DNA of 64,000 nucleotides from Eutreptiella sp. 'Long Island Sound 2002' (lineage: Eukaryota; Protista; Euglenida), in contig OZ038378.1 in assembly GCA_964036045.1 (NCBI GenBank), positions 2,852,001 to 2,916,000 on the forward strand. Direction: 5' to 3'. Positions within the stretch are counted from its first letter, which is position 1, and the number at the start of each line of letters is the position of its first letter. The notes beneath the pieces were generated by a model. The model was given only the letters and a program-made list of their open reading frames with translations. It made no database searches and was not told the origin of the DNA. Below, piece by piece: positions 2 through 34,079 of the stretch. The position numbers were made by a program, and so were the translations under genes.

Positions 2-937
2 GAAGACATTGGACCCACAGGTGTAAAGCGACTGGCCAATGCCTTACAAGGCAATACATCTCTTATGACACTAACTGTTGGGTTTAATGACCTTGGAGCT
101 GATGGAGCTCGCAGTCTGGCAAAAGCCCTTGTTGAGAACGTGTCACTGAATGCCCTCAATATTGATGGCAACGGCATCGGCGCTGAAGGGGCCAAGAATC
201 TCGCGGCCATGCTGGAACTTAATGGCGCTCTGCGTGCCCTCAATGTATACTTCAACGATATTGGAGACGACGGTGCCAAGGCGTTGGCTGCAGCACTGAA
301 ACGCAATAGCACGCTGCACACGCTCATTGCTGCCGACAATTCTATCACCGTTACTGGGACACGCAGCTTATGCTCAATGCTGCGAGTGAACTCAAGCCTC
401 ACGGAACTGGATATTCGTGGAAACAGCTGTGGACCATATGGGGCCAAGTATCTGGCGATCATGTTGGAAAGTAACCGAACATTGACTGCGCTGGATGTCG
501 GAGTGAACCATATTGGGGCGGCTGGAGCACAGTTGTTAGCCTCAGCATTGCGCCTCAATTCTACTTTGCGAAGGCTTGATATCGGAGGAAATGACATTGG
601 GGTGGCGGGGGCCCGTTTTGTGGCGAATACTCTGGCAGCCAACACGTGCTTGACATCTTTGATGCTGTGTGGGAATGCAATCGGCGATGCGGGTGCTGCT
701 GACGTTGCAGCCATGCTGCAGCAAAACCAGACCCTTCGGACGCTGCACTGTTCCCATAATGATGTTGGCATCGTGGGCGCAGAAGCAGTGCTGGTGGCAC
801 TGCAGGCGAATGCTTGCCTCACAGATGTTGACCTGCACGGCAATTGCTTTGACAGTACCACCGTGGCATGGTTCTCTGCACTGTTGTGTGTAGATGTCTC
901 AGATCAGCGACCGCCAGAACGGGCATGCGGTACCTGA
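2..937 (+). CDS. Leucine-rich repeat protein, RNI-like/NLRC3-like 28-residue repeats; 5' end lies outside the window
   Basis: The frame is open from position 2 (EDIGPTGVKRLANALQGNTSL...) to the stop at 935-937. About 10 regular 28-aa repeats of the form NxxLxxLxLxxNxIGxxGAxxLAxxL. Confidence 0.92.
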   Translation, partial: EDIGPTGVKRLANALQGNTSLMTLTVGFNDLGADGARSLAKALVENVSLNALNIDGNGIGAEGAKNLAAMLELNGALRALNVYFNDIGDDGAKALAAALKRNSTLHTLIAADNSITVTGTRSLCSMLRVNSSLTELDIRGNSCGPYGAKYLAIMLESNRTLTALDVGVNHIGAAGAQLLASALRLNSTLRRLDIGGNDIGVAGARFVANTLAANTCLTSLMLCGNAIGDAGAADVAAMLQQNQTLRTLHCSHNDVGIVGAEAVLVALQANACLTDVDLHGNCFDSTTVAWFSALLCVDVSDQRPPERACGT

Positions 938-12984: not shown

Positions 12985-13715
12985 CTATTCCTCCCAATCC
13001 AGGTCCCGGTGCTTCACAGGGATGCTGCGATTCAGCACCAGCTCCGTGCCTCTCAAAATCGAATGCAGTGCAATCAACGCAACGTACAAATGCCCCATGA
13101 GCTCGTCATTGCGGCACTGCGCGTACACGTTGCCGCTGTCCAGCGAGTGTCGGAGGTACTTGGTCTCGTTGCCGCACTCGACGATGTAGAAGCCCTTGCC
13201 GATCGGCACGCTCCGCTCGTTGGTGCGCTGCTTGCCCACGCGCCCCGCGTAGACCCCGATCACGTGCTCCGGCGGGAAGTCCACCTCCGCCACGAGGCCC
13301 GGCCTCCCATCCGCCTGCCGGATGACGTGCACCCCCTGCATGGGCCTGAAAGTGTGGGCCATGCGCAGCTGCGGCAGCGTCACACACTTGTCCCACTTGA
13401 AACCAGACGTGTACTCCAGTTCTGGCGGCCACGTGGACACCACAAAATCCCCGCAGGCCATCTCGGCCTCGGAGAGCGGGGGCTGCTGGTTGCCCTTCAG
13501 ACTGTCCCAGTACTGTTGGCCGTAGTCCAGCAGGAACTCCTCCCCTTTCCGGACTGGCCGCTCGGTGAAGCACGCCGGCGCTGCCTCGCCCGTGAGGATG
13601 TGCGCCTCGGACTTCATACACACGTTGTGGCGCGCGGCAATGTTGCGGTAGTCGTTGATGAACCGCGCCTCGTTCCCCCCCTTTGATGCATCCACGTCCA
13701 CGATGGACCGGGCCC
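12985..13715 (-). CDS. Exon 6: C-terminal half of SET 1 and a degenerate SET 2
   Basis: DASKGGNEARFINDY...KGEEFLLDYGQQYW, then GLVAEVD...IGVYAG...GNETKYLRHS...RGTELVLN; stop at 12985-12987. Confidence 0.88.
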
Positions 13716-16700
13716 CTACCACGCAATGCGTGTGGCAGCAGAGGGCAACGAGGGGCACCGAAAGATAAAAGTGGGAGTCGGGTGGGGGGGAGACTCCACA
13801 AACTATGGATCAGCACATGCAGAACAGTCAACGTAAGACTACGTTTTTGACTAACTTTTGAAGCGATTTTCGTTCCTAACTGGCCTGTTTTCAAGCCTTT
13901 TGGGACACTGTGGGGATCAAGGGGGGATAAAATGAACTGAAAATGGGGTCGAGGCACTTGCTTGCGCATCCCAAGTGGTCTGGGATCACCGTTAGCAAAC
14001 GTGACGTGTTGTTGCTGGCTTGTTGCTTCGGGTTGTTGTTAAGTAGATACAAGGGGGGCACGGGGGGACATCATGGTGGCAAAGAGGGAGGAAGGGCAAG
14101 AACCACAGGCTGGCCAGAATATGTGGCATCGGGTAGATTGACTTGTGGAGGCACTGGAGGGTACAATTCGCACGGGAAACTTCTTGTTTCCAATTGGATG
14201 CAAACTTTACCAATCAAATCCCAAAGGGTCCGCAAACTTCCCACACACATTTGACCTCCCTTTCTGGCGGTGGTACGTAGGTGCTGTTGTGCTTGTGAGT
14301 GAGTGCGAAGTTGGAAACCCGCTGACCCAATGAGAAACTCCAGGAGGCACAGTGTTGTGGTGTTCACTGGGCCGCACGTGGCATGGCGCAACTGAAACAG
14401 CCACCCCCATCGTCAATGTCCCAGTGCTAGTGCAAGACTCGGACGGCGTGTTCGGAGTTTGAAGTGAACCAGACGATTGGTCCCCATGGCAATCCAGCGG
14501 TTGGCGAGTCACGGTGACCACGCCCATGAACTGTATCCTCAAATATCCGCCGATGAAGGCCTGGGTCGGGGTTACTCAAAGCGAATCGCAGCGAGGCCGC
14601 ATACCAAGTTTTGTGATAAATTGCGAGTCGGTGTCCTCACAACACAGCGTGACCAACCCCGTGTACACGCAGATGCGCCGGCGCGCGGCGAAGTCCTGTG
14701 CTGCAAACAGGCCGTAGCCCCCTCGAGCAGGATGGGTGGCCTTGCAGATCTTGCGGATCTCCACCCCCCGCACCGCAACGGAGGCCCGGAAGTGCTGCAC
14801 CTCCGCCCAGTCGAAGATGTTCTGGTCCCAGAACAGGAACGAGTACAGATGGTGCCGCGAGGAAATGGGCCATTCGGGGCCGAGGGATGACCCCGATTCT
14901 GCGCCATTCGCCAGCAGCTTGCCCCCCTTGCCCTTGCCCCTTCCCTTGCCCTTCCCCCTGCCCTTACCCTTGCCCCTCCAAATCGCAGGATAGTGCGGCT
15001 CGGGGGGCGGCTGCGCGTGTGCGAATTCCACAATCCGCGCGTATCCCTCACGCATGTCGAGGATCATGTGGTGGTCCTGCCCGTCATACTCCACGCTGTA
15101 CGTGCCGTCGCTGTGGACCCCTACAACTGTGGCAAACTCCCAAGTGCTCTCGTACTTGTCGTCAAACTCCACCTGAGAGCCGGACCGGGACGGGCATGCG
15201 ACTCGTGCTGGGGGTTGGGAGGCAGTGTGCAGGGCTGCACGCTCCGGCACACGTGCATGACGCAGACTGCGCAGGTCTGTGAACTGATGCTCGGCCAAAA
15301 AAAAGAAGGGCAGACCGGCAGGGATGGATATAGTGGGGGGGGGGGGGGAAGGGGTGCCACGCTCTGCTCCTGGTTGCTTGACTGCCTCCTTGCTGGATTG
15401 ATAGATGAAGGCACTGATTAATGGATTAGCTGCCCGCATAAATGCACATTCTGATTTGTGGCCCCTTGAGTTGGGGATAGGGACTCGCAGCGGCCGGCCA
15501 ATTCTGGCAATTTCCACTACTTTTGACCCTTGAAAAAAAAAGATGGTGCTTGGCCCTGACTACATACATCTTCGCATTCAGCGCATTCCGCTGATCAATT
15601 TGATGGGCCTCATGACATCTTTTGGAAGAAAATTTTTCTGAGATTTTGGACCACTTTTGTCCCCTCGAAAAAAAAATTCGGCGGCTTGGGCGCCGAAATT
15701 TGCCCTTTACCATTAGAGGGACAGAGGAGACATTTCGTCATTTCGTCATCTCGGGCCCCGCAGAGCCCCCCTCCCCCCCCGCCACCCGTCACTATCATGT
15801 CCATCCCTATCCCTGCAATCCGGGCGACAAGGCTGCATTCTGACGGGGTCCCGAGCTGACAAGCCCATCGCTGCGCGCTACACGGGGTGCGCACGGATGC
15901 CCCGTGCGGACGCTGGTCTGCGACACGGGAATCCTCAGCTCAGCACACGACGGCAGCACAACACAAACAAAACCCCATGGTTTTGCGTACGTGGGTGCGA
16001 CTTGCACAGAACCCTGGCCACCGTCCGACAGAGCCCTTGTGCTGGGGTGGACAACGGAAGGACAGACACACAATTCCATCGCCATCGACAACAGAGGGAA
16101 ATCATGGGTGGAAATTGGGGGGAGGGGGAGGGGGAGGGAAATCGGAGGAAACGGGAGGGACGAGCGGGGAATGGAGGGTTGGGGGGGGGGTTGTTTGGGG
16201 TTCGCAAGTGTTCGCAAGCGTTCACAAGATAACTCTGCGACATATGCACAGCGAAACACAGGACAAAGAAAACCAAGGCACGACACACAGACCAGACTCT
16301 TGTGCGGGTATATCTCCGCTGCGGTCTCAAACACGTGCTGGTACGTGGATGCATTGGCATGGGGGCTGTTGGGCCTCACATGGATGATGCAGGGGGGGGG
16401 GGCGGGCAAAGTAGAAAGGCTTGAAGGATGACCGTCTGCCTCATCCGAAATAAAATACAACTGGGGGGGGGGGGTTACGATAACACATCCGATGGGACTG
16501 TGGACAGAGGTGTGTGGACAGCAAAAACAGTCAAACGACCCCGGCAACAACCAGCACATCCGCAATACGCCAATTATTGGGCGCCGCTGACACGCAAACG
16601 GCACACCATGCCACATTCAGCACAGTCCCAACACGCCAACTACTGGGCTCCGCGAACGCGGAAACGACACCAGCAAGAGCACCGGCCGCAGCGGCCGACA

Positions 16701-19700
16701 GAAAGCAGCGACCCGACGCAACATGCGAAGGGAAGAACGGGTGACCGTCCAGGGCCCCGTAAAGGAGCAACAACCAGACGGAATGTCACACAGGGGGTTA
16801 CGATAACACATCCGATGGGACACACAAACAGAATCGTTCAGGGACAACTGGAAAACAATGTGTTGCAGAATGTTCATGGGAAACAAATCCCAAACACAGC
16901 GGACCAGTCTCTGCCTGCCGAGGGCCCCGGGCCTCACAACCACTTCGATCACCATCAGCACAGGCATCCCCCACCCCAACAAAACCACCGCAATCAGACC
17001 AACACCCACAACCTCGACGGCAACGGCAACCACAACCCCCACCGCCCACAGGCCCCAACAGACCTCCAGCCGTGTGCCAGGCACCAGCCTTCCCACCCGC
17101 CGTGCCCATGACTTGATGCCGTCGTCCAGCAGCCGGTAGCACGATTGCTTTGCATTGATCGTCCACGGGCGACCCTCGTCGTTGTCAAACGCAATCCCGT
17201 ACCCCGCGGACGTTTTGCTGACGACGGTGCCGGGGTACCACGTGAACCCCTCCTCTGACTCATCGTGGAATTTGACCTCGACACGTGAGTTCAGATGGAT
17301 GGCACCAGCGGCTCGCTTGCCCCATTTGGGGATGCAGTGGCGGAAGTGAGGCCCAATGGTGTCCCTCTTGAGCCGCACCTGTTGACGTAGCAGGGACCGC
17401 AGCGCGTAAGAACCACAGAACAGCAGGCGGATCAGGCCTTTGCTTAGTGATACTGGGGGGGGGGGTCAAATTGGCCCCCCGGGATTTTGGCTGACCCACC
17501 CACCCACCCACATCAGAAAATTTTTCCTCAGGATAAAAATGAAATCACCTCGCAGAGGTTGTTAGATCAAAGCCAGGCAGGCGTATATATTGGGAAAACG
17601 CCACATACCCCCCCATTTGGGCCTATTCGCGTACCCTACCCCAAGGGGTTGAATTGTTACTTTAACCCCTTGTAAAATCATTATTTTGTCCAATAAACCC
17701 ATCACCCAATGAGTTTTTGGTCCGGACACCCCCAGACCCCCCCCACTTGAAACCCACTTTTTAGAGGGGGGGGTGGGGGTGGGGGGGGGTGGGGGGTGGG
17801 GTCAAAAATGTCGAAAAAAATGACCCCCCCTTTTTTTGGGTCGAAAATCATGAATCTTTTGGTTTTTTTCGATTTTGAGCCGAAAAAGTGTTTCCGGGTC
17901 CCGACTCCATAGGGTTTGTATGGGGCGGAGTGGGACGAGCGCTTATGCAGTTTATGCACTTTTCAGCCATTTTTGGTATGTTGGCGGTTTTGGCGACCTC
18001 GGTGACCCCGTGGTATCCACTTTGAGGGGTGTGAGTGGGGATGTTGTGACAATATATGCGTACTAGGATACGGAAGGACGTTTTTTGCAGTCTCTAGCCT
18101 TGCTTAGGGCCGTTCACAACGCGTGCCAAAGACGCGAAATGGCTATTTCCACCAATAATGGCCTAGTGAATGGGGCGGTACACAACCTGCTTATGCAGTT
18201 TTTCACCCTGGGCAGCTCAAAAATCGAAGTTTTCGAAACCTGTTTTTTTGATATTGTGAGCACCTAAAATGACCATCCAAGGTATGTAAAGCATGTTTTA
18301 GGCCGTATTTACGTGTTTTTCACCCTATTTGGGTATTAGGTCCGGGGGGGGGGGGGGGGGTCCTCCCAAGGGACTGGTACACAACCAGCTTATGCAGTTT
18401 TTCACGCTGGGCAGCTCAAAAATCGAAGTTTTCGAAACTTGTGTTTCTGATATTGTGACCACCCAAAATGACCATCCAAGCTATCTAAAGCATGTTTTAG
18501 GCCGTAGGTACGTGGTTTTCACCCTATTTGGGTAATAGGTCCGGGGGGGGGGGGGGATTTCCCAAGGGATTGGTACACAACCTGCTTATGCAGTTTTTCA
18601 CCCTGGGCAGCTCAAAAATCGAAGTTTTCGAAACTTGTTTTTTTGATATTGTGACCACCTAAAATGATCATCCAAGGTATGTAAAGCATGTTTTAGGCCG
18701 TATTTACGTGTTTTTCACCCTATTTGGGTATTACGTCCGGGGGGGGGGGGGGTCCTCCCAAGGGACTGGTACACAACCAGCTTATGCAGTTTTTCACGCT
18801 GGGCAGCTCAAAAATCGAAGTTTTCGAAACTTGTGTTTCTGATATTGTGACCACCCAAAATGACCATCCAAGCTATCTAAAGCATGTTTTAGGCCGTAGG
18901 TACGTGGTTTTCACCCTATTTGGGTAATAGGTCCGGGGGGGGGGGGGGGGGGGGCTCTCCCAAGGGATTGGTACACAACCTGCTCATGCAGTTTTCACCC
19001 CGGGCAGCTCAAAAATCGAAGTTTTCGAAACTTGTTTTTTTGATATTGTGACCACTTAAAATGACCATCCAAGGTATGTAAAGCATGTTTTAGGCCGTAC
19101 GTACATATTTTTCACCCTATTTGGGTATTAGGTCCGGGGGGGGGGGGGGCTCCCAAGGGATTGGTACACAACCTGCTCATGCAGTTTTTCACCCTGGGCA
19201 GCTCAAAAATCGAAGTTTTCGAAAAATTGCTTTTTTGATATTGTCACCACTTAAAATGACCATCCAAGGTATGTAAAGCATTTTTTGGGCCGTATTTATG
19301 TAGTTTTTACCCTATTTAGGGTGTGTGTGGCTTGGGGTAAAATTCTCTGCGAGGTGGACTTGCCGAAGGCAATAGAATTTATCAAAGGGGCCCGAACTTG
19401 GAGGTCGATTTTAGGTACACAAACTTTTTTTTGGCCTCTGACCCCCCCCCCCCCCGGTATAGTATCAACCAGCCACTAAGCAAAGGCCTGAGGCGGATAC
19501 AGCCTTGGGGGTGCAAAAAGAAGGCACCCAGCGACACCCCGCCCCACCCACTTACGAATGGGAAGGGTCCCAAAGCAAAAAGCGCTAAAGGCGCAGTTCT
19601 CCCAGCCCCGGCTTTTGCAGACCGGAGCACTGGCATGCCTTTTTGACGTGGCCCCGGCTGGAAAATGTGGGTCATTTCGGCACAGAGCATCACCCGCCCC

Positions 19701-22700
19701 CCCCCCCCCCCCCGCGTAGGTACTGCATTGGGGTATCAAGTGGAAAGAAAAGGCAAACCCATCGGACAAACATTGCAACCAAATGAACGGTGCAATGCCC
19801 GTGGGGATCAGGGCTGTCCTTGCCAGGGGGAACAAAAGCGTCCCACTTCGCCCAACCTGTCAAGAGGTCCCGGTGGCGTGCCGGTGGCGTGGTCGTGGTT
19901 GTGGAACGAAAAAAAGTGAGAAAAACAGCGTTTCGGGGTTTCATTGCGCATGTCCCACGGAGTATTTTGGAGCAAGGGCTCCCGGATTTGTGACAGTGGA
20001 TGATAAGCACCATGGGGTGCTGAGACCTGGGAAGAGAAAGGAGGCCTATTCCCTATTCTGAACAATGGTTTGAACCAGTGGGGTACTAAATTAGGTCCTA
20101 CCAAGTTGGCCCAGTTGGTTTATTCTCTATCCAGGTGGCCGTGGTTACGGTAGATTTGGACAAATATAAAGAGGCATTTTTATATACCTTGGCTACCGTT
20201 TGGAATGTGGACTCCGTCGTTAACTTAGAGGATTCTATTGCACAAGCCGCTATGGGTTTGGCAAGACGCCTGAGGAGAAGCCACAGATGCTGCTTGGCAC
20301 AGACGAGGAAGGTGCGGCACTCCCGGAGGAAGCACTCACACGGACAGGGCCGCACTCCCTGAGGAAGGCACTAACGAGAACGGTGTAGGACTCCCTCTCC
20401 CTCAGTAATTGGGTCCACGGTTCATCACCCATCCCAAACCCCAATTCACCTACGGCCACACAGCCCCGGGCACTTGCCAGACGGTCCCTAGAACAGACCG
20501 CACCTGACACTTAGGACACGTCTCCATCAGAATCGTCTCTTCGTCCGTCTCGGAGTGGTAATCATCGAACGATCCTGCCAACGGGTCGACTGGTGTCGCC
20601 TGGGGTTTCTCCTTTGGCCGCTGCGCGCGGCGTGTGCGGCGTGCGGGCCCCTCCAAGCCCAACCAGGCCAGCTTCCGCAGGGAAGCCATTCCGCCGCGGC
20701 CTCGACCTCGACCTCCATGGCTCCCAGGCTGTGTTCTTCCTTCGCGGGATCGATTCGATCTCTCTCCATGAGTCAAGCTGTCATCCCCCGAACTCACGGC
20801 AGCCGCCCCTTCCTCAGCTGCCCCGGTGCTGCAGCGCTTGCGCTTCGATCCCACGGCTTCTTCCTTTGAGGCCTTAGCCCCCATGGCAACGCGGAACGCG
20901 GTGTGGCGCGGGTCCAGCAACACAGGGTCTTGTCCGTTGCCATAATCAACGAGGTAAAGACAGTTGCTGTTCTGGGCCACCACCGTTCCTGCATAGTAGA
21001 CTGCCTCCCCTGCGGTCGACCAGCACACCTGATGTACACAAGAGCACAGCCAAGGCAAGCGCAGGGTGAGTATTAGTACAAAAGTCATGGGTTTTTTGAG
21101 GGAGCAAAAGCATTGAGGTCTCGTATGGGGTGACGGGTGCACAGTGTGCACACGGTGCGCACCCTTTTGGGCAATTACACAGCTTTCACCCTCAAAGCGG
21201 ACCCTCACAAAAAGCCCCAGATTAGCAACATGGACACCAAGAAAACAGCTGGCAAATGGGCATCTGATCAGGTTCTCACAGTCTGAACTGACATTCCGCA
21301 GTCAAAGCCTTACAGAATATGAAAACCGGCAAAGAATCTGGGGCATAGACAGCGAAGCATGTTGTCCATCAGGTGTGGGGATGGGGCGACCGACCGTCCA
21401 CTGAGGCATGCTGTTCATCAGGTTCAACTGTCGAGAAGGTTGAGGTCGATGGGGATGGGCTCCGAATGTGGAACTCAAGGCAGTGGAGTGCAGCAGCACC
21501 ATGAATCACTGCCTTCCCATTCACCTCATATCGCATGCTAGGTAATCACCAGGGTGCTGGGAGAGGGCCAGAACAATAGCAGGAACTCATTTGCACTGGT
21601 GCAGGGATAATAGACACGGGTACCAGCTTGGACCCAACACAATGACATGGTGTTGCCGAGCTATTGACCAAGGAAATACAATGCAACTCTCAAAGTGTTG
21701 AGGATAAAATAGCGTACCAGCTCAGCAACACAGCACCTCAGGGGGCAACAACTTAGCAGAACAATGCGGTCAGGTAAATTATCTAAAGTAAAAAGGTGCA
21801 CAGTACGCACACGGTGCAGGCCGCTCCCCCTATTGGTCATACAGGAGCAATGCAACACAGATGCCTTTGCCACACAGAGAGCATGAACGCACCTCCACAG
21901 ACGTCCCTATCGACAGTCCGCTGCGATCAATCACAGTGAATGGGCCCTCGTCCGGGTCGAAGTCCGTGGTATCCCCCGTGTCGAAGTGGATCTCGTAGGT
22001 CCCTCCATCCTTTCGCCCCGTAACCGTCCCCTTGTACGGCGTGGGCTCGTTGTCGTAGCGCACGGCGATGCGTGTGCCAAGCGGGAGCCCGCCCTCGTCT
22101 TGGTCACAGAGGAAATCCCAATGCCTGCGCCAGGCATGCCGCATTTGGGAGGTGTTGAGCACACTGGAGTCCCCGGCAGGGTGGTGCTGACCAGGCTTGA
22201 GGCTCGAAGCTGGGCAATTCAATGGGGACCACAGAAGGTCCTCGGGGCAGGCTTGCACTCGCTCATCTGCTTGGCCATTCAAAATAGCCTCGACAGTCCT
22301 CAGCGACGCACTGAACTCAAGTCCAAGGCAGCTGGTCATAGATTCCGGTTTGGTGGATGTGGGAGAAGCAGACTCCAGCCTTGTGTCTGGGTTGACTGTC
22401 TTTCCTTGCATGGCTTCTTCAGCCGTTGGGGTCAGCGTCTGTAACGGGTCAGAATGCTTTAAAGGCTCCCTGCTATTTACATCATCACTCTGCAGGCCTC
22501 CCTCCAGCTGCTGGTGCATGCCTGCATCCCCCTCTTGAGACCCAATCTCTTGCCTGTTGCTGCCAACACCATCTTGCTGCCACCCCTGCTGTCGGATCTG
22601 CTTCGACTGTTGCTGCTCGACCGCATCCACCTGCACTGCCTCCTCCTGCAACTGGCTTGAAAGCTGCTGCTGCTGCGCGTCCTCCTGCACTGCTACACCC

Positions 22701-25170
22701 CCTGGATTCACTGCCTTTTCCCACAAATGGGAACCCCTTGGACCCTGAGGCACCCCATCCTCCTGCTGCAGTGAACTCTCCTGTGGCATTGCCTTCTCAT
22801 TCTCCTCCTCGTCCCGCTGCTGCCGCTGCTGCTCCTGCTGCTGCTGCACGCCATCTTCCTGCTGCAGTGAAGTCTCCTGTGGCACTGCCTCCTCCTCCTG
22901 CTGCTGCTGCTGCTGCTGCTGCTCCTGCTGCTGCTGCACCCCATCCTCCTGCTGCAGTGAACCCTCCTGTGGCACTGCCTCCTCATCCCCCTCCTCCTGC
23001 TGCTGCTGCTGCTCCTGCTGCTGCTGCACCGCAACCTGCTGCTGCTCCTGCTGCTGCTGCTGCACCGCAACCTGCTGCTGCAATGCCTCAATCTGCAAGC
23101 AGCTTGCATCCAACTGCATAGGGTCTTGTTGCTGCGGTGCCTCTGCCTCCCCAGGCCTCCCTGCTTGCGCATGGCAACGACTGGAATGCTGGATGTCTAC
23201 CTCCCGGCGAGAGACGCTGGCTGATAGGTCGATGCGCATGGGTTGCACATCCTGTTGTGCCTGACGCTGCAAAGCATTCTGGTCAAGAACCACTGCAGCG
23301 TCAAGACTGAGTGTAGTGGCTGGCGTGGCATTGCTGGTTGGCAGTGTCGCTCCTATATGACGCACTGCAGGCATAGTGCAATGACCTTGCCTCTGTAGGC
23401 GTGGGGTGCCATCGCAACCACCATACCTGCCAAAGCTGCACTGTTCCAGCCCACTCACTGCAACCATGTGGCCATTGCTGCGGGGTTGTGTGAATTGAGG
23501 GGTGGTCACACTACTGTGAGCCTCCTGCACGGGGAAAAAGCCCACGGCAGGAGGCTGCGTGCCGTGGTGTACAGGAAGGGCGTTGAAACTGGAAAGGCAT
23601 GCCGCTTTCGAGGAACCTGAGGAAACAGTACAGCCGCTGAGCTTGTTCTGACACATATTGCTCTCACTTTTGCGTTACGCTTGCCCTGTCCTCAGACCTG
23701 GAGATAGAGTGTATCCACACTAGCACGGGATACACACTTTTTGTTTTTGGGATACACACAGGATACACACTCTAGAACCCTGGGATACACATGCGATACA
23801 TGCAAACCATGAAAAATGGGGCTGGGGAGCTTGAGCTAGAAGAGGAGTCATCATCCTTTGCAGAGGGAGCTGCAAGATGCGGCTTCAAAGATAATTGCTT
23901 CATCGTGTCTGGGGAAGAGCCGCAAGGGAACGAAGGACTGGGGAACTGAGCGCGTAGAACTATAAATGAAGAAAAAGTTGGGATACACATGTGATACACA
24001 TACTTGAAAGTTGGGATACACATTGGACACACACTTCTAAAGCCTGGGATACAGTCGGATACAATAATTACAAGTTTTGGGATACACTCTATCTCCAGGA
24101 CTGCCTGCCCTCCCCCCTACCTGCCCATCACCTCCTCCCCTGGATACTCGAGCTGCTGATGGGGATGCACCAAGTGCTATCCTCCCTCATTCCCTCTCAA
24201 AAGGTCAAAAAACCAGAAATCATCTTGGGCCATTCCTCCCGTTGGACCCCATCCCGTCAAATTGTCCCTCCCCAAATGCGACCCATCCCAGGACTTCTAC
24301 CGAGGCTTCCACTGTTCCGCATTGCCCCGTAGTCGCTGTGACCCTTCCCCTGTTGGACCTTCCAAACATTCCTTTGGCGAACCCCATTCTGATACGTTGA
24401 AAGCTAAGACTTGTGCGGAGGGTCCACACACCTTGTGACTGGAGGCATGTCCCATTGTGGTGTGGGCTCACTTGTCCACCAGCAGGTATCGGAATGGGTG
24501 CTGACGCGCCGGAGTCAGAGAAAAACGCCTGTGCATGCACAGGACTTTCTGGAGGACAACTGGGGCTGCAAAGTCCAGCACTGACAGCAGCATTACCATT
24601 CAAGGCCACTTGTTGAAGTTGAGCAGCTGCGCCATAGGATGATGATGTCGCAATTAGCGTCCACAAATCAGCCTCATTGTCGAAGAAATGCTGCACGACA
24701 ATGTCCTTCATACCCGGGCTAATGTGGACAAGCGAGGCTGCTAAGCGCCGGAATAACCCAGGCGGGAAATTGCTCACGCTTTGCGACTTCCAAAAGAGGA
24801 GGATTTTGAGCACCGTGTTCAAGTTACTGGACTCTGCGACTGCGGCGGCCCACATAACGTCCGGCAACACCGCGTACACGCACTTTTGCAAGTACTCGAG
24901 AGATGCACTATCTGGGGTACCGCCCTTAAGTGCACGATCCGCATGTAGGATAATGTCAGACAGCAAGCAAAGCACTGCAAACCGGCTTGCAACTTCACCT
25001 TTGACGACACAATCCGTGATCATAGCGAGGACACTCCCAACCTTGGCCGTATTCTGCATGACCCACGTAATGGCCTCCGAGGGGTACCGTGCATTCTCGG
25101 TTTTGGCCAAGCATGTCCGCCAAAACTGCGCCTCTTCTTGAGTGAGGGCCCCTCCGAAGCATACGGACAT
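12985..25170 (-). CDS. Six-exon gene for a ~1533-aa CID / 4x Tudor-like / C2HC zinc finger / 2x SET protein (putative lysine methyltransferase). Exons 25170-24432, 23616-21893, 21028-20504, 17378-17064, 15172-14605, 13715-12985
   Basis: All five introns are GT..AG with matching phases (1,0,0,0,1). Exon total is 4602 nt, divisible by 3. Splicing rebuilds split motifs: GTSVE|VCW and GTRLE|VEF (Tudor), CPKCQ|VRLKRDTIGPHFRHC (zinc finger), FITKL|GARSIVDVDASKGGNEARFINDY (SET). Confidence 0.8.
14605..15172 (-). CDS. Exon 5: rest of Tudor-like 4, RGKGKG repeat, N-terminal half of SET 1
   Basis: CTCTCAG|GTG acceptor; WEFATVVGVHSDGTYSVEYDG; GYGLFAAQD...ICVYTG; donor TTG|GTATGC. Confidence 0.85.
16470..16821. 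repeat. ~350-bp dispersed element bounded by 29-bp identical direct repeats
   Basis: GGGGGTTACGATAACACATCCGATGGGAC at 16470-16498 and 16793-16821. Confidence 0.7.
17064..17378 (-). CDS. Exon 4: second half of the zinc finger, Tudor-like 3, start of Tudor-like 4
   Basis: CAACAG|GTG acceptor; LNSRVEVKF...WYPGTVV...YGIAFDND; donor GAG|GTCTGT. Confidence 0.82.
17433..19490. mobile_element. Non-autonomous hAT-type DNA transposon (2058 bp) in intron 3 of the SET gene
   Basis: Perfect 17-bp TIR CAGGCCTTTGCTTAGTG (17433-17449) / CACTAAGCAAAGGCCTG (19474-19490), with the 8-bp TSD AGGCGGAT at 17425-17432 and 19491-19498. Confidence 0.88.
18178..19325. repeat. ~197-bp satellite, ~6 copies, with alternating A/B variants in copies 1-4
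   Basis: Unit TACACAACC(T/A)GCTTATGCAG...GGTCCG(G)n...CCCAAGGGA(C/T)TGG; copies 2 and 4 share GTTTCTGAT/GCTATCTAAAGC variants. Confidence 0.92.
20504..21028 (-). CDS. Exon 3: rest of Tudor-like 2, basic/RG-rich linker, first half of the zinc finger
   Basis: CATCAG|GTG acceptor; VCW...YYAGTVV...YLVDYGNG; ends METCPKCQ with donor CAG|GTGCGG. Confidence 0.82.
21893..23616 (-). CDS. Exon 2: low-complexity Gln/Glu-rich linker, Tudor-like 1 and start of Tudor-like 2
   Basis: Acceptor TGTACTGTTTCCTCAG|GT; 1.7-kb open frame; LPLGTRIAVRY...YKGTVTGRKDGGTYEIHFDTGD; donor GAG|GTGCGT. Confidence 0.8.
22745..23095 (-). repeat. Coding (CAG)n-rich tandem peptide repeat
   Basis: E-x-AVPQE(G/T/S)SLQQEDGVQ(Q)n units repeated 3-4 times inside exon 2. 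Confidence 0.9.
23698..24098. mobile_element. 401-bp MITE with 19-bp TIR and 3-bp TSD in intron 1 of the SET gene
   Basis: CTGGAGATAGAGTGTATCC (23698-23716) / GGATACACTCTATCTCCAG (24080-24098); GAC at 23695-23697 and 24099-24101; about ten internal GGATACAC motifs. Confidence 0.85.
24432..25170 (-). CDS. Exon 1: CTD-interacting (CID/RPR)-like helical domain
   Basis: SEAITWVMQN...RFAVLCLLSDIILH...LNTVLKILLFWKSQ fits the CID pattern (SI..W; KL..LYL.SDI; ..ll..W). Donor CAAG|GTGTGT at 24431. The link to exon 2 is the weakest junction of the model. Confidence 0.65.
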
Positions 25171-27176
25171 GTAAGGCCCACACCTGCCGAAGTGCGCGGG
25201 AACAAAACACTGCTAAAAGCGTGAGGGGCATAGGACCAACAATGGGGCCAGCATTGTGCAAGGTAGACAAGAAATTTGGATAACATCCAATCTGATCATA
25301 ATTGGGAACTCGACGCCATCCGGCGAATTATCCAACGTTGTCCTGTTTCTGGTCCCAGCAACCTGGCAGGGCAGCCCACCTTCACACTTTGTGGGGGTGA
25401 AGTGAAGGGATAAGGGGCACACTGCGCGCTTGCACTACTTCCCCCAACCAACCTGATAACAGCTCCCCTTCCAAACGCAGCCCCAATCCACCTCTGAAGA
25501 ACCCAGTGTTGCTCCCTATCTTCCCCAGGCCAAGACAACATGCAACAGTAACACAATAATGTGTTGACACTTATACTAAACTCAAACGGGAGCACATCCT
25601 GGATACTCAAAGGGAGTGTGTGGTATCCCAACAAGGACCCAACATGGCACCTGCAAGCATAGACAAAGAGATAGATAATTCAACAAAACTCCGGAAGAAA
25701 GGAAGAAAGAATCCTGACAGCCAAGCAGGCCCTCCTACACCACCCCGTAGAGAGTAGAAACATACAACACCACATTTGTAACCATTTCTCTCAGGGACAT
25801 TCGGTATGTGCCAACACGGTGGGTTTTGGCACTTTTCCTGGGTTTTGTGAACGTTTGGTCCAATGCGCCAAAATTTCGTCCCTTTTTTTTGGGGGGGGGG
25901 GGTATGTATATACTTTTTGAAATCTGTGAGAATAGGCCGTTTCAGAAATGTATGGGTCGGGGGGGGGGGGGGGATCAGAAACCATGTTTTTGCAGAATCG
26001 GAGGCCGAAGTTGGACGCTGCTAGGATTTTCAGCGAGCTGCCCGCGCAGCTTGCACAGGTCTGCACCCCAAGTTTCCCTGTGCCGGGGGATGCTCTAACA
26101 TATCGCTACCTCACAACACAATCAAATAGGCTATATTGATGGACTTTGATGTGCAGAATTCAAAAATGCAAGAGTTAGGCCTCAACACAATATGATAGAG
26201 ATATTGGCCGTTTGGTGTCAATCGGTAGACAATCGCAAACTTGTCCCGACAAGCACATGAATCTCTGTTGCTTTGAACCGATTGTACGAGGTTTCTTGGC
26301 CTGCTTGGCAGGATGCCGAGTCACCTACACCCACACTACACCCCTAGAGCGAGCCCTTTTGCGAACCAAAGGCTTTCGTGGTGCATCACGGGAAGCAACA
26401 GCCCATGGGGTGAATTTGCATGCGGACATGGTCTCTGCTTGTTGACAAAAAGAGGCAACAGGCTGCACACACACACATTGTCCAAAATGGAAGAAATTCT
26501 CAAACATATCGTCAGTACAGCATGCAAACCCAGGGTTCCAAATACCCCTTTTTCAAGGGCTTTCCGAATACACCCCATATACCCCCCCCCCCCCCTATGG
26601 GACCCACAGTGGGCACAAATCAAGCAACAATGACGACGACCACCGAAAACCTACCGAGTTGGCGCATTCAGTACCGACCCCGAGAGATTTGCAAGTGGTA
26701 CATATATAGTAGGAGAGCATATCACTATTTTGTCCGACAATTAATGTCAACCAAATTTGCTTCGTCTACCGTGTGTGCTGTATTCAAGGTGCCCCCTCGC
26801 TGTCATGGGGCCCAAGTTTTCACGAGCAAGAAAACTCACCGCAAGGCATGTGAATGTCAAAAGTTTGTCCAACGATCCACTTGGCCTCACACAATCATTT
26901 CAAAACAGCAATAGTCTTTGAGACGGGCCTGACACACGATGCACAAGCCGAGGCGTGGGTGCCTCATGGATGCTAGGATGACCGTGCGCTAGGACTGTAC
27001 ATGGTTTCTTTGGTCAAGGCAAGAGACAAGCTTCAATTCAACAACAAAATTGTCCTTGGACCACAAGTAGCCCAAGCAATAGTTTGGCAGCCACAACCAA
27101 AATGGGGGAGCTTCCTTGTGACCTATGGTGGTTGTCGGAGCATGCAACCCCTCCCCCGATAGTCTCCCCAAATTTT

Positions 27177-33358: not shown

Positions 33359-34036
33359 TCACAACAACACAACTGCCAGGTCCCTCGGATGCAAACCCCA
33401 CAAACTGTAATTGTAGATATAATACCACAGATTCGCATCGCCCGCCCCGAACTTAAGGGGCATCAAGAACTTCTCGTTGTCCATCAGATCCAGCGCATTG
33501 AATGTGTCGACCCCCGCGTTCTTCGCCAGAATGAGCGCATCCGTCATGAGCTGCTGTAGATCGGTGGCCGTGGCCACGTTGAGGTAGCTGTAGACCTCGT
33601 GCACGTGGGTGTGGGAGTGCTTGGGGTTGCCCAGAATGCTGCTGGGCAGAGTGTAGTAGCTCACAAGGTCCGTGACCCTGCCCTCCGTTTCGACCACGTA
33701 CGAATTCATGATGCCTTCGCGGGGGAGCAGCAAATGCTGCACCTCCGCTTCGTCGAACACCTGAGCGAAGGCGAATTTCTCGAGGTATGAATTGAGCAGC
33801 TCCCGCACCTGCGGCACGTCCGCCTCCTTCATTTCGCGAAGGTTCGGGAGTTGGGGCTTGTCGGGGAGGGCGAAGAAGCGCTCGGTCGCGACCATGGGGC
33901 GCTGCATCCGCACAAACTGCGGGGGGATTGTGGAGAACTCTATCTCGATCAGCTTTTTGGGGTTGAGCATACGGTGCCAGTACCGACACGTGCTCATGTG
34001 AGGCTGGGGCAGCACAACACCCGCCGTGTACACGGC
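33359..34036 (-). CDS. NMT: Glycylpeptide N-tetradecanoyltransferase, 3' exon
   Basis: AVYTAGVVLP...RYWHRMLNPKKLIEIEF...FGAGDANLWYYIYNY...LAVVLL-stop; acceptor TGCCACAG|GCC at 34037. Confidence 0.93.
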   Translation of the reverse strand, partial: AVYTAGVVLPQPHMSTCRYWHRMLNPKKLIEIEFSTIPPQFVRMQRPMVATERFFALPDKPQLPNLREMKEADVPQVRELLNSYLEKFAFAQVFDEAEVQHLLLPREGIMNSYVVETEGRVTDLVSYYTLPSSILGNPKHSHTHVHEVYSYLNVATATDLQQLMTDALILAKNAGVDTFNALDLMDNEKFLMPLKFGAGDANLWYYIYNYSLWGLHPRDLAVVLL

Positions 34037-34079
34037 CTGTGGCACAATGCAAAAGGCAGGATGATACGGCACTACGGTG

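What the first reader, a model, noticed from the sequence alone, without database searches (positions are those of the whole stretch)
12985..25170. Single protein joining a CID, two tandem-Tudor pairs, a UBZ-type finger and twin SET domains
Seen: six ORF blocks over 12 kb splice through phase-matched GT-AG sites into one ~1533-aa frame, and four of the five junctions rebuild interrupted motifs. Known: CID domains (Pcf11, Nrd1, RPRD) bind the RNA Pol II CTD, tandem Tudors read methyl-Lys/Arg, and SET domains transfer methyl groups to lysine. Set2 couples to Pol II through an SRI domain, not a CID. Inference: this could be an all-in-one Pol II-recruited methyl reader/writer. I do not recognise this architecture from any described family. 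It is of extra interest in Euglenozoa, where the trypanosomatid Pol II CTD lacks canonical heptads.
Basis: partly seen in the sequence, partly recalled or inferred. Interest (0 to 1): 0.82.

Follow-up and report, generated by a model that had tools for sequence, protein, structure and literature searches.

The report
Euglena CID–Tudor–SET methyltransferase gene
A six-exon Euglena-type gene very probably encodes a lysine methyltransferase carrying four methyl-mark-reading (Tudor-like) modules, a zinc finger and a second, degenerate SET domain, and probably also an N-terminal RNA-polymerase-II-tail-binding (CID) domain, a combination I could not find described; the one splice that attaches the CID is still unproven.

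Summary
Six minus-strand open blocks between 25170 and 12985 join through GT..AG sites in matching phase into 4599 nt (1533 codons).

Four junctions restore motifs:
- J2 and J4 each rebuild the first strand of a Tudor-like repeat at the same position.
- J3 rebuilds a C-x2-C-x11-H-x3-C finger.
- J5 rebuilds a SET domain, and it is collinear with intronless paralogues in the same genome.

The domain calls hold up unevenly:
- **CID:** below the Pfam cut-off in this protein, but a 43%-identical homologue passes it. A confident model (pLDDT 88.8) has nine CID structures as its nine best matches among 48,161 chains (Z 13.5–10.2; VHS and ENTH about 7).
- **SET1:** a clear Pfam hit.
- **SET2:** a true SET fold (Z 12.3 to EZH2), but it lacks the NH motif and the catalytic Tyr, so it is probably inactive.
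- **Tudor:** sub-threshold but consistent.
- **UBZ:** rests on inspection only.

An RNA-type contig from the source species carries the Euglena spliced leader just upstream of the ATG, so exon 1 starts an mRNA. No read or database protein crosses any junction. J1, which attaches the CID, rests only on site quality, phase and proximity (about 0.65–0.7). I found no described equivalent. Function is inferred.

The parts
25213..25219 (-). Spliced-leader trans-splice acceptor (cttttAG) ahead of the 42-nt 5' UTR (25212-25171)
   Evidence: In one search a contig of run X12 (same species label as the DNA source) lies on 24904-25219. It then runs on with 14 letters whose reverse complement is CTGAGTGTCTATTT. 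That string extended to the 21-mer SL occurs about 5800 times in G000 and 0 times in the control. The genomic sequence there is not SL.
24432..25170 (-). Exon 1: ATG, CID domain (fold spans aa 7-157, about 25152-24700), then a low-complexity linker to the donor AAG|GTGTGT
   Evidence: Pfam CID E 0.0028, 18.3 bits, below GA 23.9; homologue P0003 scores 24.3 bits, above GA. AF2 pLDDT 88.8. The nine best matches of 48,161 chains are all CIDs, Z 13.5-10.2. ESM features: 58 of 100 hits are CID clusters. Single copy in the genome.
23617..24431 (-). Intron 1 (814 nt, GT..AG, phase 1), containing a MITE with TIRs at 23693-23716 and 24080-24103
   Evidence: The donor is the only 5/5 consensus site among 27 GT sites downstream of the CID. 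The acceptor TTTCCTCAG|G has the strongest polypyrimidine tract near the head of the open frame. No RNA evidence.
21893..23616 (-). Exon 2: about 480 aa of Q/E-rich disordered linker with a 90-nt repeat x3.2 (22750-23045), Tudor-like repeat 1 (about 22087-21920) and the first strand of repeat 2 (GTSVE)
   Evidence: Exact metatranscriptome contigs lie at 23074-23271 and 23299-23449.
21029..21892 (-). Intron 2 (864 nt, GAG|GTGCGT..CATCAG|G, phase 0)
20504..21028 (-). Exon 3: rest of Tudor-like repeat 2 (VCWSTAGEAVYYAGTVV...), KRKR and RGRGRG tracts, and the first half of the zinc finger (CPKCQ, 20518-20504)
   Evidence: Pfam Agenet E 0.13; alignment A2; exact metatranscriptome contig at 20660-20916.
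17379..20503 (-). Intron 3 (3125 nt, CAG|GTGCGG..CAACAG|G, phase 0), holding a 395-nt tandem array (18177-19322) of an abundant dispersed repeat
17064..17378 (-). Exon 4: second half of the zinc finger (…HFRHC), Tudor-like repeat 3, and the first strand of repeat 4 (GTRLE)
   Evidence: Pfam Agenet E 0.066. Single copy in the genome.
15173..17063 (-). Intron 4 (1891 nt, GAG|GTCTGT..TCTCAG|G, phase 0). It cuts the repeat at the same position as intron 2.
14605..15172 (-). Exon 5: rest of Tudor-like repeat 4, a (GK/GR)n tract, the N-flank and the N-terminal half of SET1 (GGYGLFAAQDF…YTGLV)
   Evidence: Pfam Tudor_3 E 0.033 and Agenet E 0.12. E5 131-189 aligns to residues 1255-1315 of the intronless paralogue.
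13716..14604 (-). Intron 5 (889 nt, TTG|GTATGC..GGTAG|G, phase 1) inside SET1
   Evidence: In the C11 paralogue the equivalent site is uninterrupted.
12985..13715 (-). Exon 6: C-terminal half of SET1 (GNEARFINDY…EEFLLDYG, about 13713-13459), a linker, the second degenerate SET-fold domain (aa 119-234, about 13359-13012) and the stop at 12987-12985
   Evidence: Pfam SET E 5.4e-9 with two stretches; PDB sequence hits to EHMT2, EZH2, LegAS4 and MLL. In the AF2 model with exhaustive fold search, all 50 best matches are SET or PR domains, EZH2 Z 12.3. Paralogue alignment A3.

Best explanation
This is a real, expressed, six-exon nuclear gene of a Euglena-type genome (2.28 Gb, with the Euglena spliced leader). 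Its mRNA is SL-trans-spliced about 42 nt upstream of the ATG at 25170.

The most likely product is about 1533 aa, in this order:
1. An N-terminal CID-fold domain.
2. About 550 aa of Q/E-rich disordered linker.
3. A tandem Tudor-like pair, followed by an RG tract.
4. A CCHC finger with UBZ4/NEMO-type spacing.
5. A second tandem Tudor-like pair, followed by a GK/GR tract.
6. A C-terminal cassette of a probably active SET domain plus a second SET-fold domain. The second domain has lost the SAM-binding NH motif and the catalytic Tyr.

Proposed mechanism (inferred, not shown). The CID tethers the enzyme to the C-terminal region of transcribing Pol II, or to another phospho-peptide. The Tudor pairs read existing methyl-lysine or methyl-arginine marks. 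SET1 then writes lysine methylation. The pseudo-SET would act as an intramolecular partner or substrate platform.

Shown: the ORF blocks, the splice-site geometry, the CID fold, SET family membership, the SET fold of domain 2, the paralogous twin-SET cassette, and the SL at the 5' end. Inferred: that all six exons are on one mRNA (especially J1), and every ligand and activity.
For: **Gene model.**. J2 and J4 restore the same Tudor strand at the same position. J3 restores C-x2-C-x11-H-x3-C. J5 is collinear with an intronless paralogue and with the C11 paralogue.

**Coding potential.** A codon-usage log-odds score was trained on unrelated genes. It is positive in frame 0 for the CID part of E1, E2 from residue 101, and E3-E6 (0.19-0.48). 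It is about 0 or negative for most read-through tails and upstream open frames.

**5' end.** An SL-bearing contig from the species' own run lies at 25219.

**Expression hint.** All five exact unique contigs listed from two estuary metatranscriptomes fall in exons 1, 2 and 3. None falls in unique intron sequence.

**CID.**

**SET1 and SET2.**

**Tudor-like repeats.**. In one search the best PDB profile hits are the PHF20, KDM4B/C, PCL, AGDP3 and SGF29 Tudor/Agenet domains.

**J1.** The only full-consensus donor after the CID and the best acceptor are phase-compatible. The 814-nt gap is intron-sized (other introns are 864-3125 nt), whereas the nearest other recognisable genes in the window lie 8-12 kb away.
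Against: - No read, contig or database protein crosses any junction.
- J1 restores no motif, and coding potential is weak on both sides of it: E1 aa 184-246 scores -0.10 and E2 aa 1-100 scores -0.07. The true donor or acceptor could therefore lie elsewhere, or the CID exon could be a separate gene.
- An in-frame ATG (23656) lies just upstream of the E2 acceptor.
- The CID hit of this protein itself is below the Pfam cut-off, and a profile of the three homologues finds no CID among PDB sequences.
- The Tyr of the CID helix-4 'LYLxND' motif is Cys here (inspection, compared from memory). Ctk3 shows that a CID fold need not bind the CTD.
- The Tudor hits are all individually non-significant.
- SET1 has ND instead of NH.
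Confidence: 0.62

Rival explanations
1. Two adjacent same-strand genes. Gene A would be exon 1 alone: a small CID-only protein of about 316 aa, reading through the proposed donor to the stop at 24220 (or spliced differently). Gene B would be the Tudor-finger-Tudor-SET protein. It would start either at ATG 23656 or, after SL trans-splicing at the AG at 23617-23618, at the in-frame Met at 23470.
For: No transcript crosses J1. J1 restores no motif. The acceptor at 23616 could serve trans-splicing as well as cis-splicing. ATG 23656 is in frame. CID-only proteins of about 300 aa exist (RPRD1 type, own knowledge). The only two relatives found are short ORFs of 263 and 198 aa. Coding potential is weak around J1.
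Against: - The 70-codon read-through tail has non-coding codon usage in all frames and is not conserved in P0002 or P0003.
- P0002 comes from short genomic contigs where read-through into an intron is equally likely, and its ORF also ends just after a CAG|GTGACC site.
- If trans-spliced at 23616, an out-of-frame ATG (GCATGC at about 23601) precedes the in-frame Met.
- A 600-nt spacing, two thirds of it a MITE, is far tighter than the 8-12 kb to the nearest recognisable neighbouring genes.
- The best donor and the best acceptor are phase-matched.
Confidence: 0.28
2. The locus is a decaying or chimeric pseudogene, or the exon chain is a chance concatenation of ORFs in GC-rich repeat-laden DNA, and no such protein is made.
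For: Long chance ORFs are common here: 97 ORFs of at least 60 aa lie in 14.5 kb, and a 148-codon open tail follows E4. No transcript was found in the protein collections.
Against: All six exons are free of stops and frameshifts. The exons with recognised domains (the CID part of E1, E2 from residue 101, and E3-E6) show frame-specific coding potential. Four junctions restore structural motifs without indels. The domains fold confidently or match families. An SL-bearing contig and exact metatranscriptome contigs cover exons 1-3.
Confidence: 0.05

Closest known systems
CID proteins (Rtt103, Seb1/Nrd1, Pcf11, RPRD1A/p15RS, SCAF8; non-canonical Ctk3)
   Same: N-terminal position and an eight-helix right-handed superhelix. 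The nine best matches of an exhaustive structure comparison are all CIDs: Z 13.5-10.2, rmsd 2.5-3.3 over 125-140 residues. Pfam CID is matched in the same register in all three family members. The Asp of the helix-4 motif is invariant (SDI).
   Different: Sequence identity is 8-17%. This protein is below the Pfam cut-off. No canonical CID protein was reached by phmmer over 1.8 billion representatives. The Tyr of the 'LYLxND' motif is Cys. Known CIDs are attached to RRM, coiled-coil, Pcf11 or CTK3 modules and, to my knowledge, not to Tudor or SET domains.
Set2/SETD2 (SET plus SRI domain)
   Same: Conceptually the same solution: a SET methyltransferase carrying a module that binds the Pol II tail. 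SET1 gives weak sequence hits to the Set2-type proteins HypB and LegAS4.
   Different: Coupling would be through an N-terminal CID, not a C-terminal SRI. There are no AWS or post-SET Cys clusters. The protein has four Tudor-like repeats and a pseudo-SET. No orthology is shown.
SETDB1 (triple Tudor plus SET) and other reader-writer methyltransferases
   Same: Tudor-family readers are fused to a SET writer. The C11 paralogue's inserted Tudor hits Pfam Tudor_5, the SETDB1 Tudor family, at E 6e-4.
   Different: Here there are two tandem pairs separated by a CCHC finger, no MBD, no bifurcated SET, plus a CID and a second SET fold.
UBZ4 / NEMO-type CCHC ubiquitin-binding zinc fingers (RAD18, NEMO)
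   Same: The spacing is C-x2-C-x11-H-x3-C, with a CPxC start, once exons 3 and 4 are read in sequence (comparison from memory).
   Different: The Asp before the last Cys that contacts ubiquitin in UBZ4 is Arg here (HFRHC). No profile test was possible because the motif is split by intron 3 and the joined step was left out.
Euglena twin-SET cassette paralogues in the same genome (L018 ORF, L017 ORF, C13 copies, C11 gene)
   Same: The same C-terminal cassette of about 300 aa: SET with FIND…ELLxDYG motifs, then an N-flank (…WD…), then a degenerate SET ending hxhxR. It is 25-37% identical.
   Different: The N-terminal parts are unrelated: ART plus repeats, a P-loop-like region, or none. Only the C11 gene also has a Tudor. 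None has the CID.

Membership tests
CID (Pfam PF04818, CTD-interacting domain) | Profile match at or above the curated cut-off (23.9 bits) | tested here: inconclusive
   The window protein scores 16.6-18.3 bits (E 0.0097-0.0028). Homologue P0003 (43% identical) scores 24.3 bits, above the cut-off, and P0002 scores 14.8 bits. All three match the same profile register.
CID (Pfam PF04818, CTD-interacting domain) | Eight-helix right-handed superhelical fold, closer to CIDs than to VHS or ENTH | tested here: met
   AF2 pLDDT 88.8. With VIA-align against 48,161 chains, ranks 1-9 are all CIDs (Z 13.5-10.2), UVSSA VHS scores 7.5 and ENTH 7.0. Foldseek's only high-TM hits are CIDs.
CID (Pfam PF04818, CTD-interacting domain) | Located at the N-terminus of the protein | tested here: met
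   The SL junction is about 42 nt upstream, 25170 is the first ATG, and the CID spans aa 7-157.
CID (Pfam PF04818, CTD-interacting domain) | CTD-contacting residues (helix-4 Tyr and Asp, helix-7 Arg) and actual binding of phosphorylated Pol II CTD | not testable with these tools
   By inspection, Asp is kept (invariant SDI) and Tyr is replaced by Cys (positions recalled from memory). The Pol II CTD of this genome could not be read. A binding assay is needed.
SET-domain lysine methyltransferases (PF00856) | Profile match above the curated cut-off (22.4 bits) | tested here: met
   Exon 6 alone scores 36.9 bits, E 5.4e-9, with two stretches. Paralogue cassettes score 38.3 and 19.7 bits.
SET-domain lysine methyltransferases (PF00856) | SET1 catalytic and SAM motifs: GxG, YxG, (R)FINH-type Asn, ELxxDY Tyr | tested here: inconclusive
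   By inspection, GGYG, YTGLV, RFIND (Asn kept; His is Asp in all paralogues) and EEFLLDYG are present. The domain is split by intron 5, so no single-sequence profile test was run. Activity was not tested.
SET-domain lysine methyltransferases (PF00856) | SET2: SET fold | tested here: met
   Model residues 119-234 have pLDDT 75-94 in most blocks. All 50 best matches are SET or PR domains: EZH2 Z 12.3, SET8 Z 10.5. SET2 is internally similar to SET1 at E 0.003.
SET-domain lysine methyltransferases (PF00856) | SET2: catalytic Tyr and NH motif | tested here: not met
   Alignment A3 shows YLRH/FMDA/FRLV in place of FINH, and the C-terminal motif is GTELVLNRS, with Arg conserved in all paralogues where the Tyr stands in SET1. 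SET2 is therefore filed as a pseudo-SET, not as an enzyme.
Tudor / Agenet 'royal family' readers | Profile match to a Tudor-family model | tested here: inconclusive
   Agenet E 0.066-0.13 in three exons and Tudor_3 E 0.033, all below the cut-offs. A profile of the four repeats has as its best PDB hits PHF20, KDM4B/C, PCL, AGDP3 and SGF29 Tudor/Agenet domains at E 0.026-0.4. Two of the four repeats are split by introns, so they were tested only in part.
Tudor / Agenet 'royal family' readers | Aromatic cage and five-strand barrel | not tested
   Aromatic residues stand at the expected positions in all four repeats (alignment A2), judged by inspection only.
UBZ4-type CCHC zinc finger | C-x2-C-x(9-12)-H-x3-C spacing, with the ubiquitin-contacting Asp | tested here: inconclusive
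   The spacing is met when exon 3's end and exon 4's start are read in order. The Asp position is Arg. No profile search was run because that would need the joined sequence, which was left out.

The most novel reading that the evidence does not exclude
A euglenid has wired a histone or protein lysine methyltransferase directly to RNA polymerase II through a CID instead of the SRI domain used by Set2. The same polypeptide carries two tandem-Tudor readers, a ubiquitin-type finger and an intramolecular pseudo-SET partner. That would be a self-contained co-transcriptional read-write module, in a lineage whose Pol II tail may be non-canonical. The twin-SET cassette would also be a new mobile catalytic module, fused in Euglena to ART, P-loop and Tudor partners.
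Probability: 0.3. Interest if true: 0.75.

Novelty: new variant of a known kind. Interest (0 to 1): 0.55.

Why it matters
Every domain here belongs to a known family, but I found the combination nowhere else. CID plus SET would be a second, independent way of coupling lysine methylation to transcribing Pol II, the first being the SRI domain of Set2.

Euglenozoa have unusual transcription, with SL trans-splicing and, in kinetoplastids, polycistrons and a non-heptad CTD. Little is known of how chromatin marks are placed there. A CID that has diverged this far (two relatives in 1.8 billion representatives) and is fused to a writer gives a concrete handle. One could ask what its CID binds, and so what the functional 'CTD code' of euglenids is.

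The SET plus pseudo-SET cassette recurs on unrelated N-terminal parts in this genome. It is a separate, testable structural novelty.

Tried and rejected
**Transcript evidence for the junctions**
- I laid two estuary metatranscriptomes, one run of a second organism and one small run of the source species on 19250-25249. No contig crosses J1 or J2, and bins 24250-24449 and 23450-23649 are empty. X9's contigs cross exon/intron borders exactly, so they behave as DNA.

**Search for relatives of the same architecture**
- A word search with exon 1 and with exon 6 returned only the window's own ORFs.
- A full phmmer search with exon 1 returned two short relatives plus one low-complexity hit (P0004, rejected).
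- P0002's contigs are 1.2-1.8 kb and genomic, with no SL and nothing recognisable downstream. P0003 has no contig on record.
- A JGI metagenome scan with the CID alignment found nothing.
- The own genome holds no second copy or processed retrocopy of the CID or Tudor exons.

**Other checks that gave nothing**
- A PDB sequence search with exon 1 and with its three-member profile found no CID.
- NCBIfam gave only weak LegAS4-type SET hits.
- For the Pol II CTD of this genome: PF05001 gave no hit with an uninformative control. The RPB1 contig ends inside the gene. The C5 copy is fragmented and partly withheld. I abandoned this line.
- Literature searches found nothing describing this architecture.

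**Left out by rule**
- The joined (spliced) protein was never assembled, searched or folded, and no junction-spanning DNA pattern was searched. All searches were exon by exon, by reference. The UBZ finger, Tudor repeats 2 and 4, and intact SET1 therefore had no whole-domain profile or structure test.

**Rejected as evidence**
- The 70-codon open read-through after the J1 donor. A 148-codon open tail follows E4 as well, so such tails arise here by composition.

Full report
**What is in the sequence**

On the minus strand between 25170 and 12985 there are six open blocks. I re-derived the splice model from the DNA:

| Exon | Coordinates |
|---|---|
| E1 | 25170-24432 |
| E2 | 23616-21893 |
| E3 | 21028-20504 |
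| E4 | 17378-17064 |
| E5 | 15172-14605 |
| E6 | 13715-12988, stop 12987-12985 |

All five introns (814, 864, 3125, 1891 and 889 nt) begin with GT and end with AG. Four donors are G|GTG-type (the fifth is G|GTATGC), and all five acceptors are YAG|G. The phases are 1, 0, 0, 0 and 1. One search printed the E1 end one base off; 24432 is correct, as one search shows.

Each block holds dozens of GT and AG sites, so phase matching alone proves little. The motif restorations carry the weight.

**Junctions 2 to 5**

- **J2 and J4.** The four Tudor-like repeats align with each other (A2). The two uninterrupted repeats begin GTRIAVRY and NSRVEVKF. J2 gives GTSVE|VCW and J4 gives GTRLE|VEF. Both junctions restore the same strand, without indels, at the same position and in the same phase. 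This is what a duplicated tandem-Tudor unit that inherited its intron would look like.
- **J3.** It joins …ETCPKCQ to VRLKRDTIGPHFRHC…, giving C-x2-C-x11-H-x3-C.
- **J5.** It joins the N-terminal half of a SET domain (GGYGLFAAQDF…YTGLV…ITKLG) to the C-terminal half (ARSIVDVDASKGGNEARFINDY…EEFLLDYG). It is also supported by homology. In an intronless 1557-aa paralogue ORF of the same genome, E5 131-189 aligns to residues 1255-1315 and E6 5-229 to residues 1322-1555. In the C11 paralogue the equivalent stretch is uninterrupted.

A codon-usage log-odds score, trained on unrelated genes, is positive in frame 0 and negative in the other frames for the CID part of E1, E2 from residue 101, and E3-E6.

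I regard exons 2-6 as one coding unit with about 0.9 confidence.

**The 5' end**

One contig from a small 2013 run, labelled with the same species as the DNA source, lies on 24904-25219. It then continues with 14 letters that are not in the genome at that place. Their reverse complement, CTGAGTGTCTATTT, is the core of the Euglena spliced leader as I remember it. The 21-mer CTGAGTGTCTATTTTTTTTCG occurs about 5800 times in this 2.28-Gb assembly and never in the reversed control.

Exon 1 therefore begins a trans-spliced mRNA at the cttttAG acceptor (25219-25213), and 25170 is its first ATG. The exact boundary is uncertain by a few bases, because the T-run of the leader overlaps the genomic T-run.

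Two estuary metatranscriptomes contain exact contigs in E1 (24609-24889), E2 (23074-23271 and 23299-23449) and E3 (20660-20916). Among those listed, none lies in unique intron sequence. This suggests expression, though DNA carry-over cannot be excluded.

**Junction 1, the weak link**

Nothing crosses 24432->23616, and no database protein contains exon 1 joined to anything.

For the junction:
- AAG|GTGTGT is the only full-consensus donor among 27 GT sites after the CID.
- TTTCCTCAG|G has the strongest polypyrimidine tract at the head of the E2 open frame.
- The two sites are phase-compatible.
- The 70-codon read-through tail has non-coding codon usage.
- The gap is intron-sized and half filled by a MITE (TIRs at 23693-23716 and 24080-24103), whereas the nearest other recognisable genes lie 8-12 kb away.
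- Trans-splicing at 23616 would put an out-of-frame ATG ahead of the first in-frame Met.

Against it:
- No motif is restored.
- Coding potential is weak for the last 63 codons of E1 and the first 100 codons of E2.
- An in-frame ATG sits at 23656.
- CID-only proteins exist elsewhere.

I put the CID-on-the-same-protein reading at about 0.65-0.7.

**The CID**

Pfam gives only 16.6-18.3 bits against a cut-off of 23.9. PDB sequence searches find nothing.

A full phmmer search over 1.84 billion representatives finds just two relatives: P0002 (37% identical) and P0003 (43% identical). Both hit Pfam CID in the same register, and P0003 passes the cut-off at 24.3 bits.

An AlphaFold model of residues 1-183, built with this three-row alignment, is confident (pLDDT 88.8, nine helices). 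In an exhaustive comparison with 48,161 chains, the nine best matches are all CIDs: Rtt103, Seb1, p15RS/RPRD1A, Ctk3, Nrd1, Pcf11, SCAF8 and CTDK-1. Their Z scores run from 13.5 to 10.2, with rmsd 2.5-3.3 over 125-140 residues. Designed repeat proteins follow at about 9, and VHS and ENTH domains at about 7. Foldseek agrees, and so do language-model features.

The fold call is solid. CTD binding is not shown. The helix-4 Asp is invariant, but the neighbouring Tyr is Cys (the motif is recalled from memory), and Ctk3 is a precedent for a CID fold that does not bind the CTD.

**The SET cassette**

Exon 6 alone gives Pfam SET E 5.4e-9 with two stretches. PDB sequence hits map residues 22-86 to the C-terminal half of the EHMT2 and EZH2 SET domains. 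They map residues 140-182 and 195-249 of the 257-aa ORF to the N- and C-terminal parts of other SET domains.

A model of exon 6 is confident only for residues about 122-236. That part matches SET and PR domains exclusively: all 50 of the best 50, with EZH2 at Z 12.3.

SET2 resembles SET1 (E 0.003), and each is preceded by a similar …F.WD… flank, so the cassette arose by internal duplication.

In alignment A3 SET1 keeps GNExxFIND and ELLxDYG. SET2 lacks the NH-type motif and has a conserved Arg where the catalytic Tyr should be. I therefore read the 'twin SET' as SET plus pseudo-SET.

The cassette recurs at the C-terminus of otherwise unrelated proteins in this genome. One paralogue has an ART domain plus repeats, one has a P-loop-like region, one is a multi-copy 343-aa ORF, and the C11 gene has a Tudor_5-like domain inserted between the two SETs.

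**Tudor-like repeats and the finger**

Each piece gives only sub-threshold Agenet or Tudor_3 hits. A profile of the four repeats has as its best PDB hits PHF20, KDM4B/C, PCL, AGDP3 and SGF29 Tudor/Agenet domains, at E 0.026-0.4. Aromatic residues stand at the cage positions. The evidence is consistent but not conclusive.

The CCHC finger has RAD18/NEMO-like spacing (from memory), but Arg stands where UBZ4 has its ubiquitin-contacting Asp. An RG tract follows the first Tudor pair and a GK/GR tract follows the second.

**What was left out**

Every search was exon by exon, by reference. The finger, Tudor repeats 2 and 4, and intact SET1 therefore had no whole-domain test.

**Comparison and novelty**

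The parts are known families. I did not find the order CID - linker - 2xTudor - CCHC - 2xTudor - SET - pseudo-SET in any relative or paper, and it is not an architecture I know.

It would work like Set2 (a writer tethered to Pol II) and like SETDB1 (Tudor readers fused to a SET), but it is a member of neither.

My verdict is a new variant of a known kind. The gene is real and the CID is real. Their union is probable but unproven, and the function is inferred.

Noticed in passing
L018:1419-6092 (-), L017:1307-5863 (-), L019:348-5105 (+), G000:C13 copies: The SET plus pseudo-SET cassette is a recurrent C-terminal module in this genome. It is fused to an ART ADP-ribosyltransferase domain plus four repeats of about 146 aa (L018), to a P-loop-like protein (L017), and it stands nearly alone in a multi-copy 343-aa ORF on C13. 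In the C11 gene a Tudor_5-like domain (E 6e-4) is inserted between the two SETs.
   Followed up: partly
window 23693-24103: A MITE of about 410 nt with 24-nt terminal inverted repeats (96% complementary) sits inside intron 1. Related copies are abundant in the runs laid (depth up to 3300 in X9).
   Followed up: partly
window 18177-19322: A tandem array (395-nt period, 2.9 copies, 93% matches) of a very abundant dispersed element lies in intron 3. The adjoining 19250-19449 reaches depth 30,000 in run X9. Similar ORF text recurs at other loci, for example L032.
   Followed up: no
window 22750-23045: A 90-nt (30-aa) repeat x3.2 encodes the Q/E-rich linker of exon 2. The read tool skipped 22880-23073 as repeats.
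   Followed up: no
window 65-937 (+) and 33362-34072 (-): Neighbouring genes: an intronless LRR protein (LRR_6, E 3e-34) and an exon of N-myristoyltransferase (NMT_C, E 1e-61). No Pfam-recognisable ORF of 220 aa or more lies within about 8 kb of the gene on either side.
   Followed up: partly
G000:C1525:31773-32096 and G000:C5:7551374-7551457: The best RPB1 (Rpb1_7) match lies in a 1421-aa open frame that runs into the end of its contig, so the Pol II C-terminal domain of this assembly could not be read there. A second, fragmentary match on C5 is followed by a stretch that is partly withheld.
   Followed up: partly
window 20700-20730 and 14925-14977: RG (GGRGRGRGG) and GK/GR ((GKGKGR)n) tracts directly follow each tandem Tudor pair. 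They may be methylation substrates, nucleic-acid-binding tracts or intramolecular Tudor ligands.
   Followed up: no
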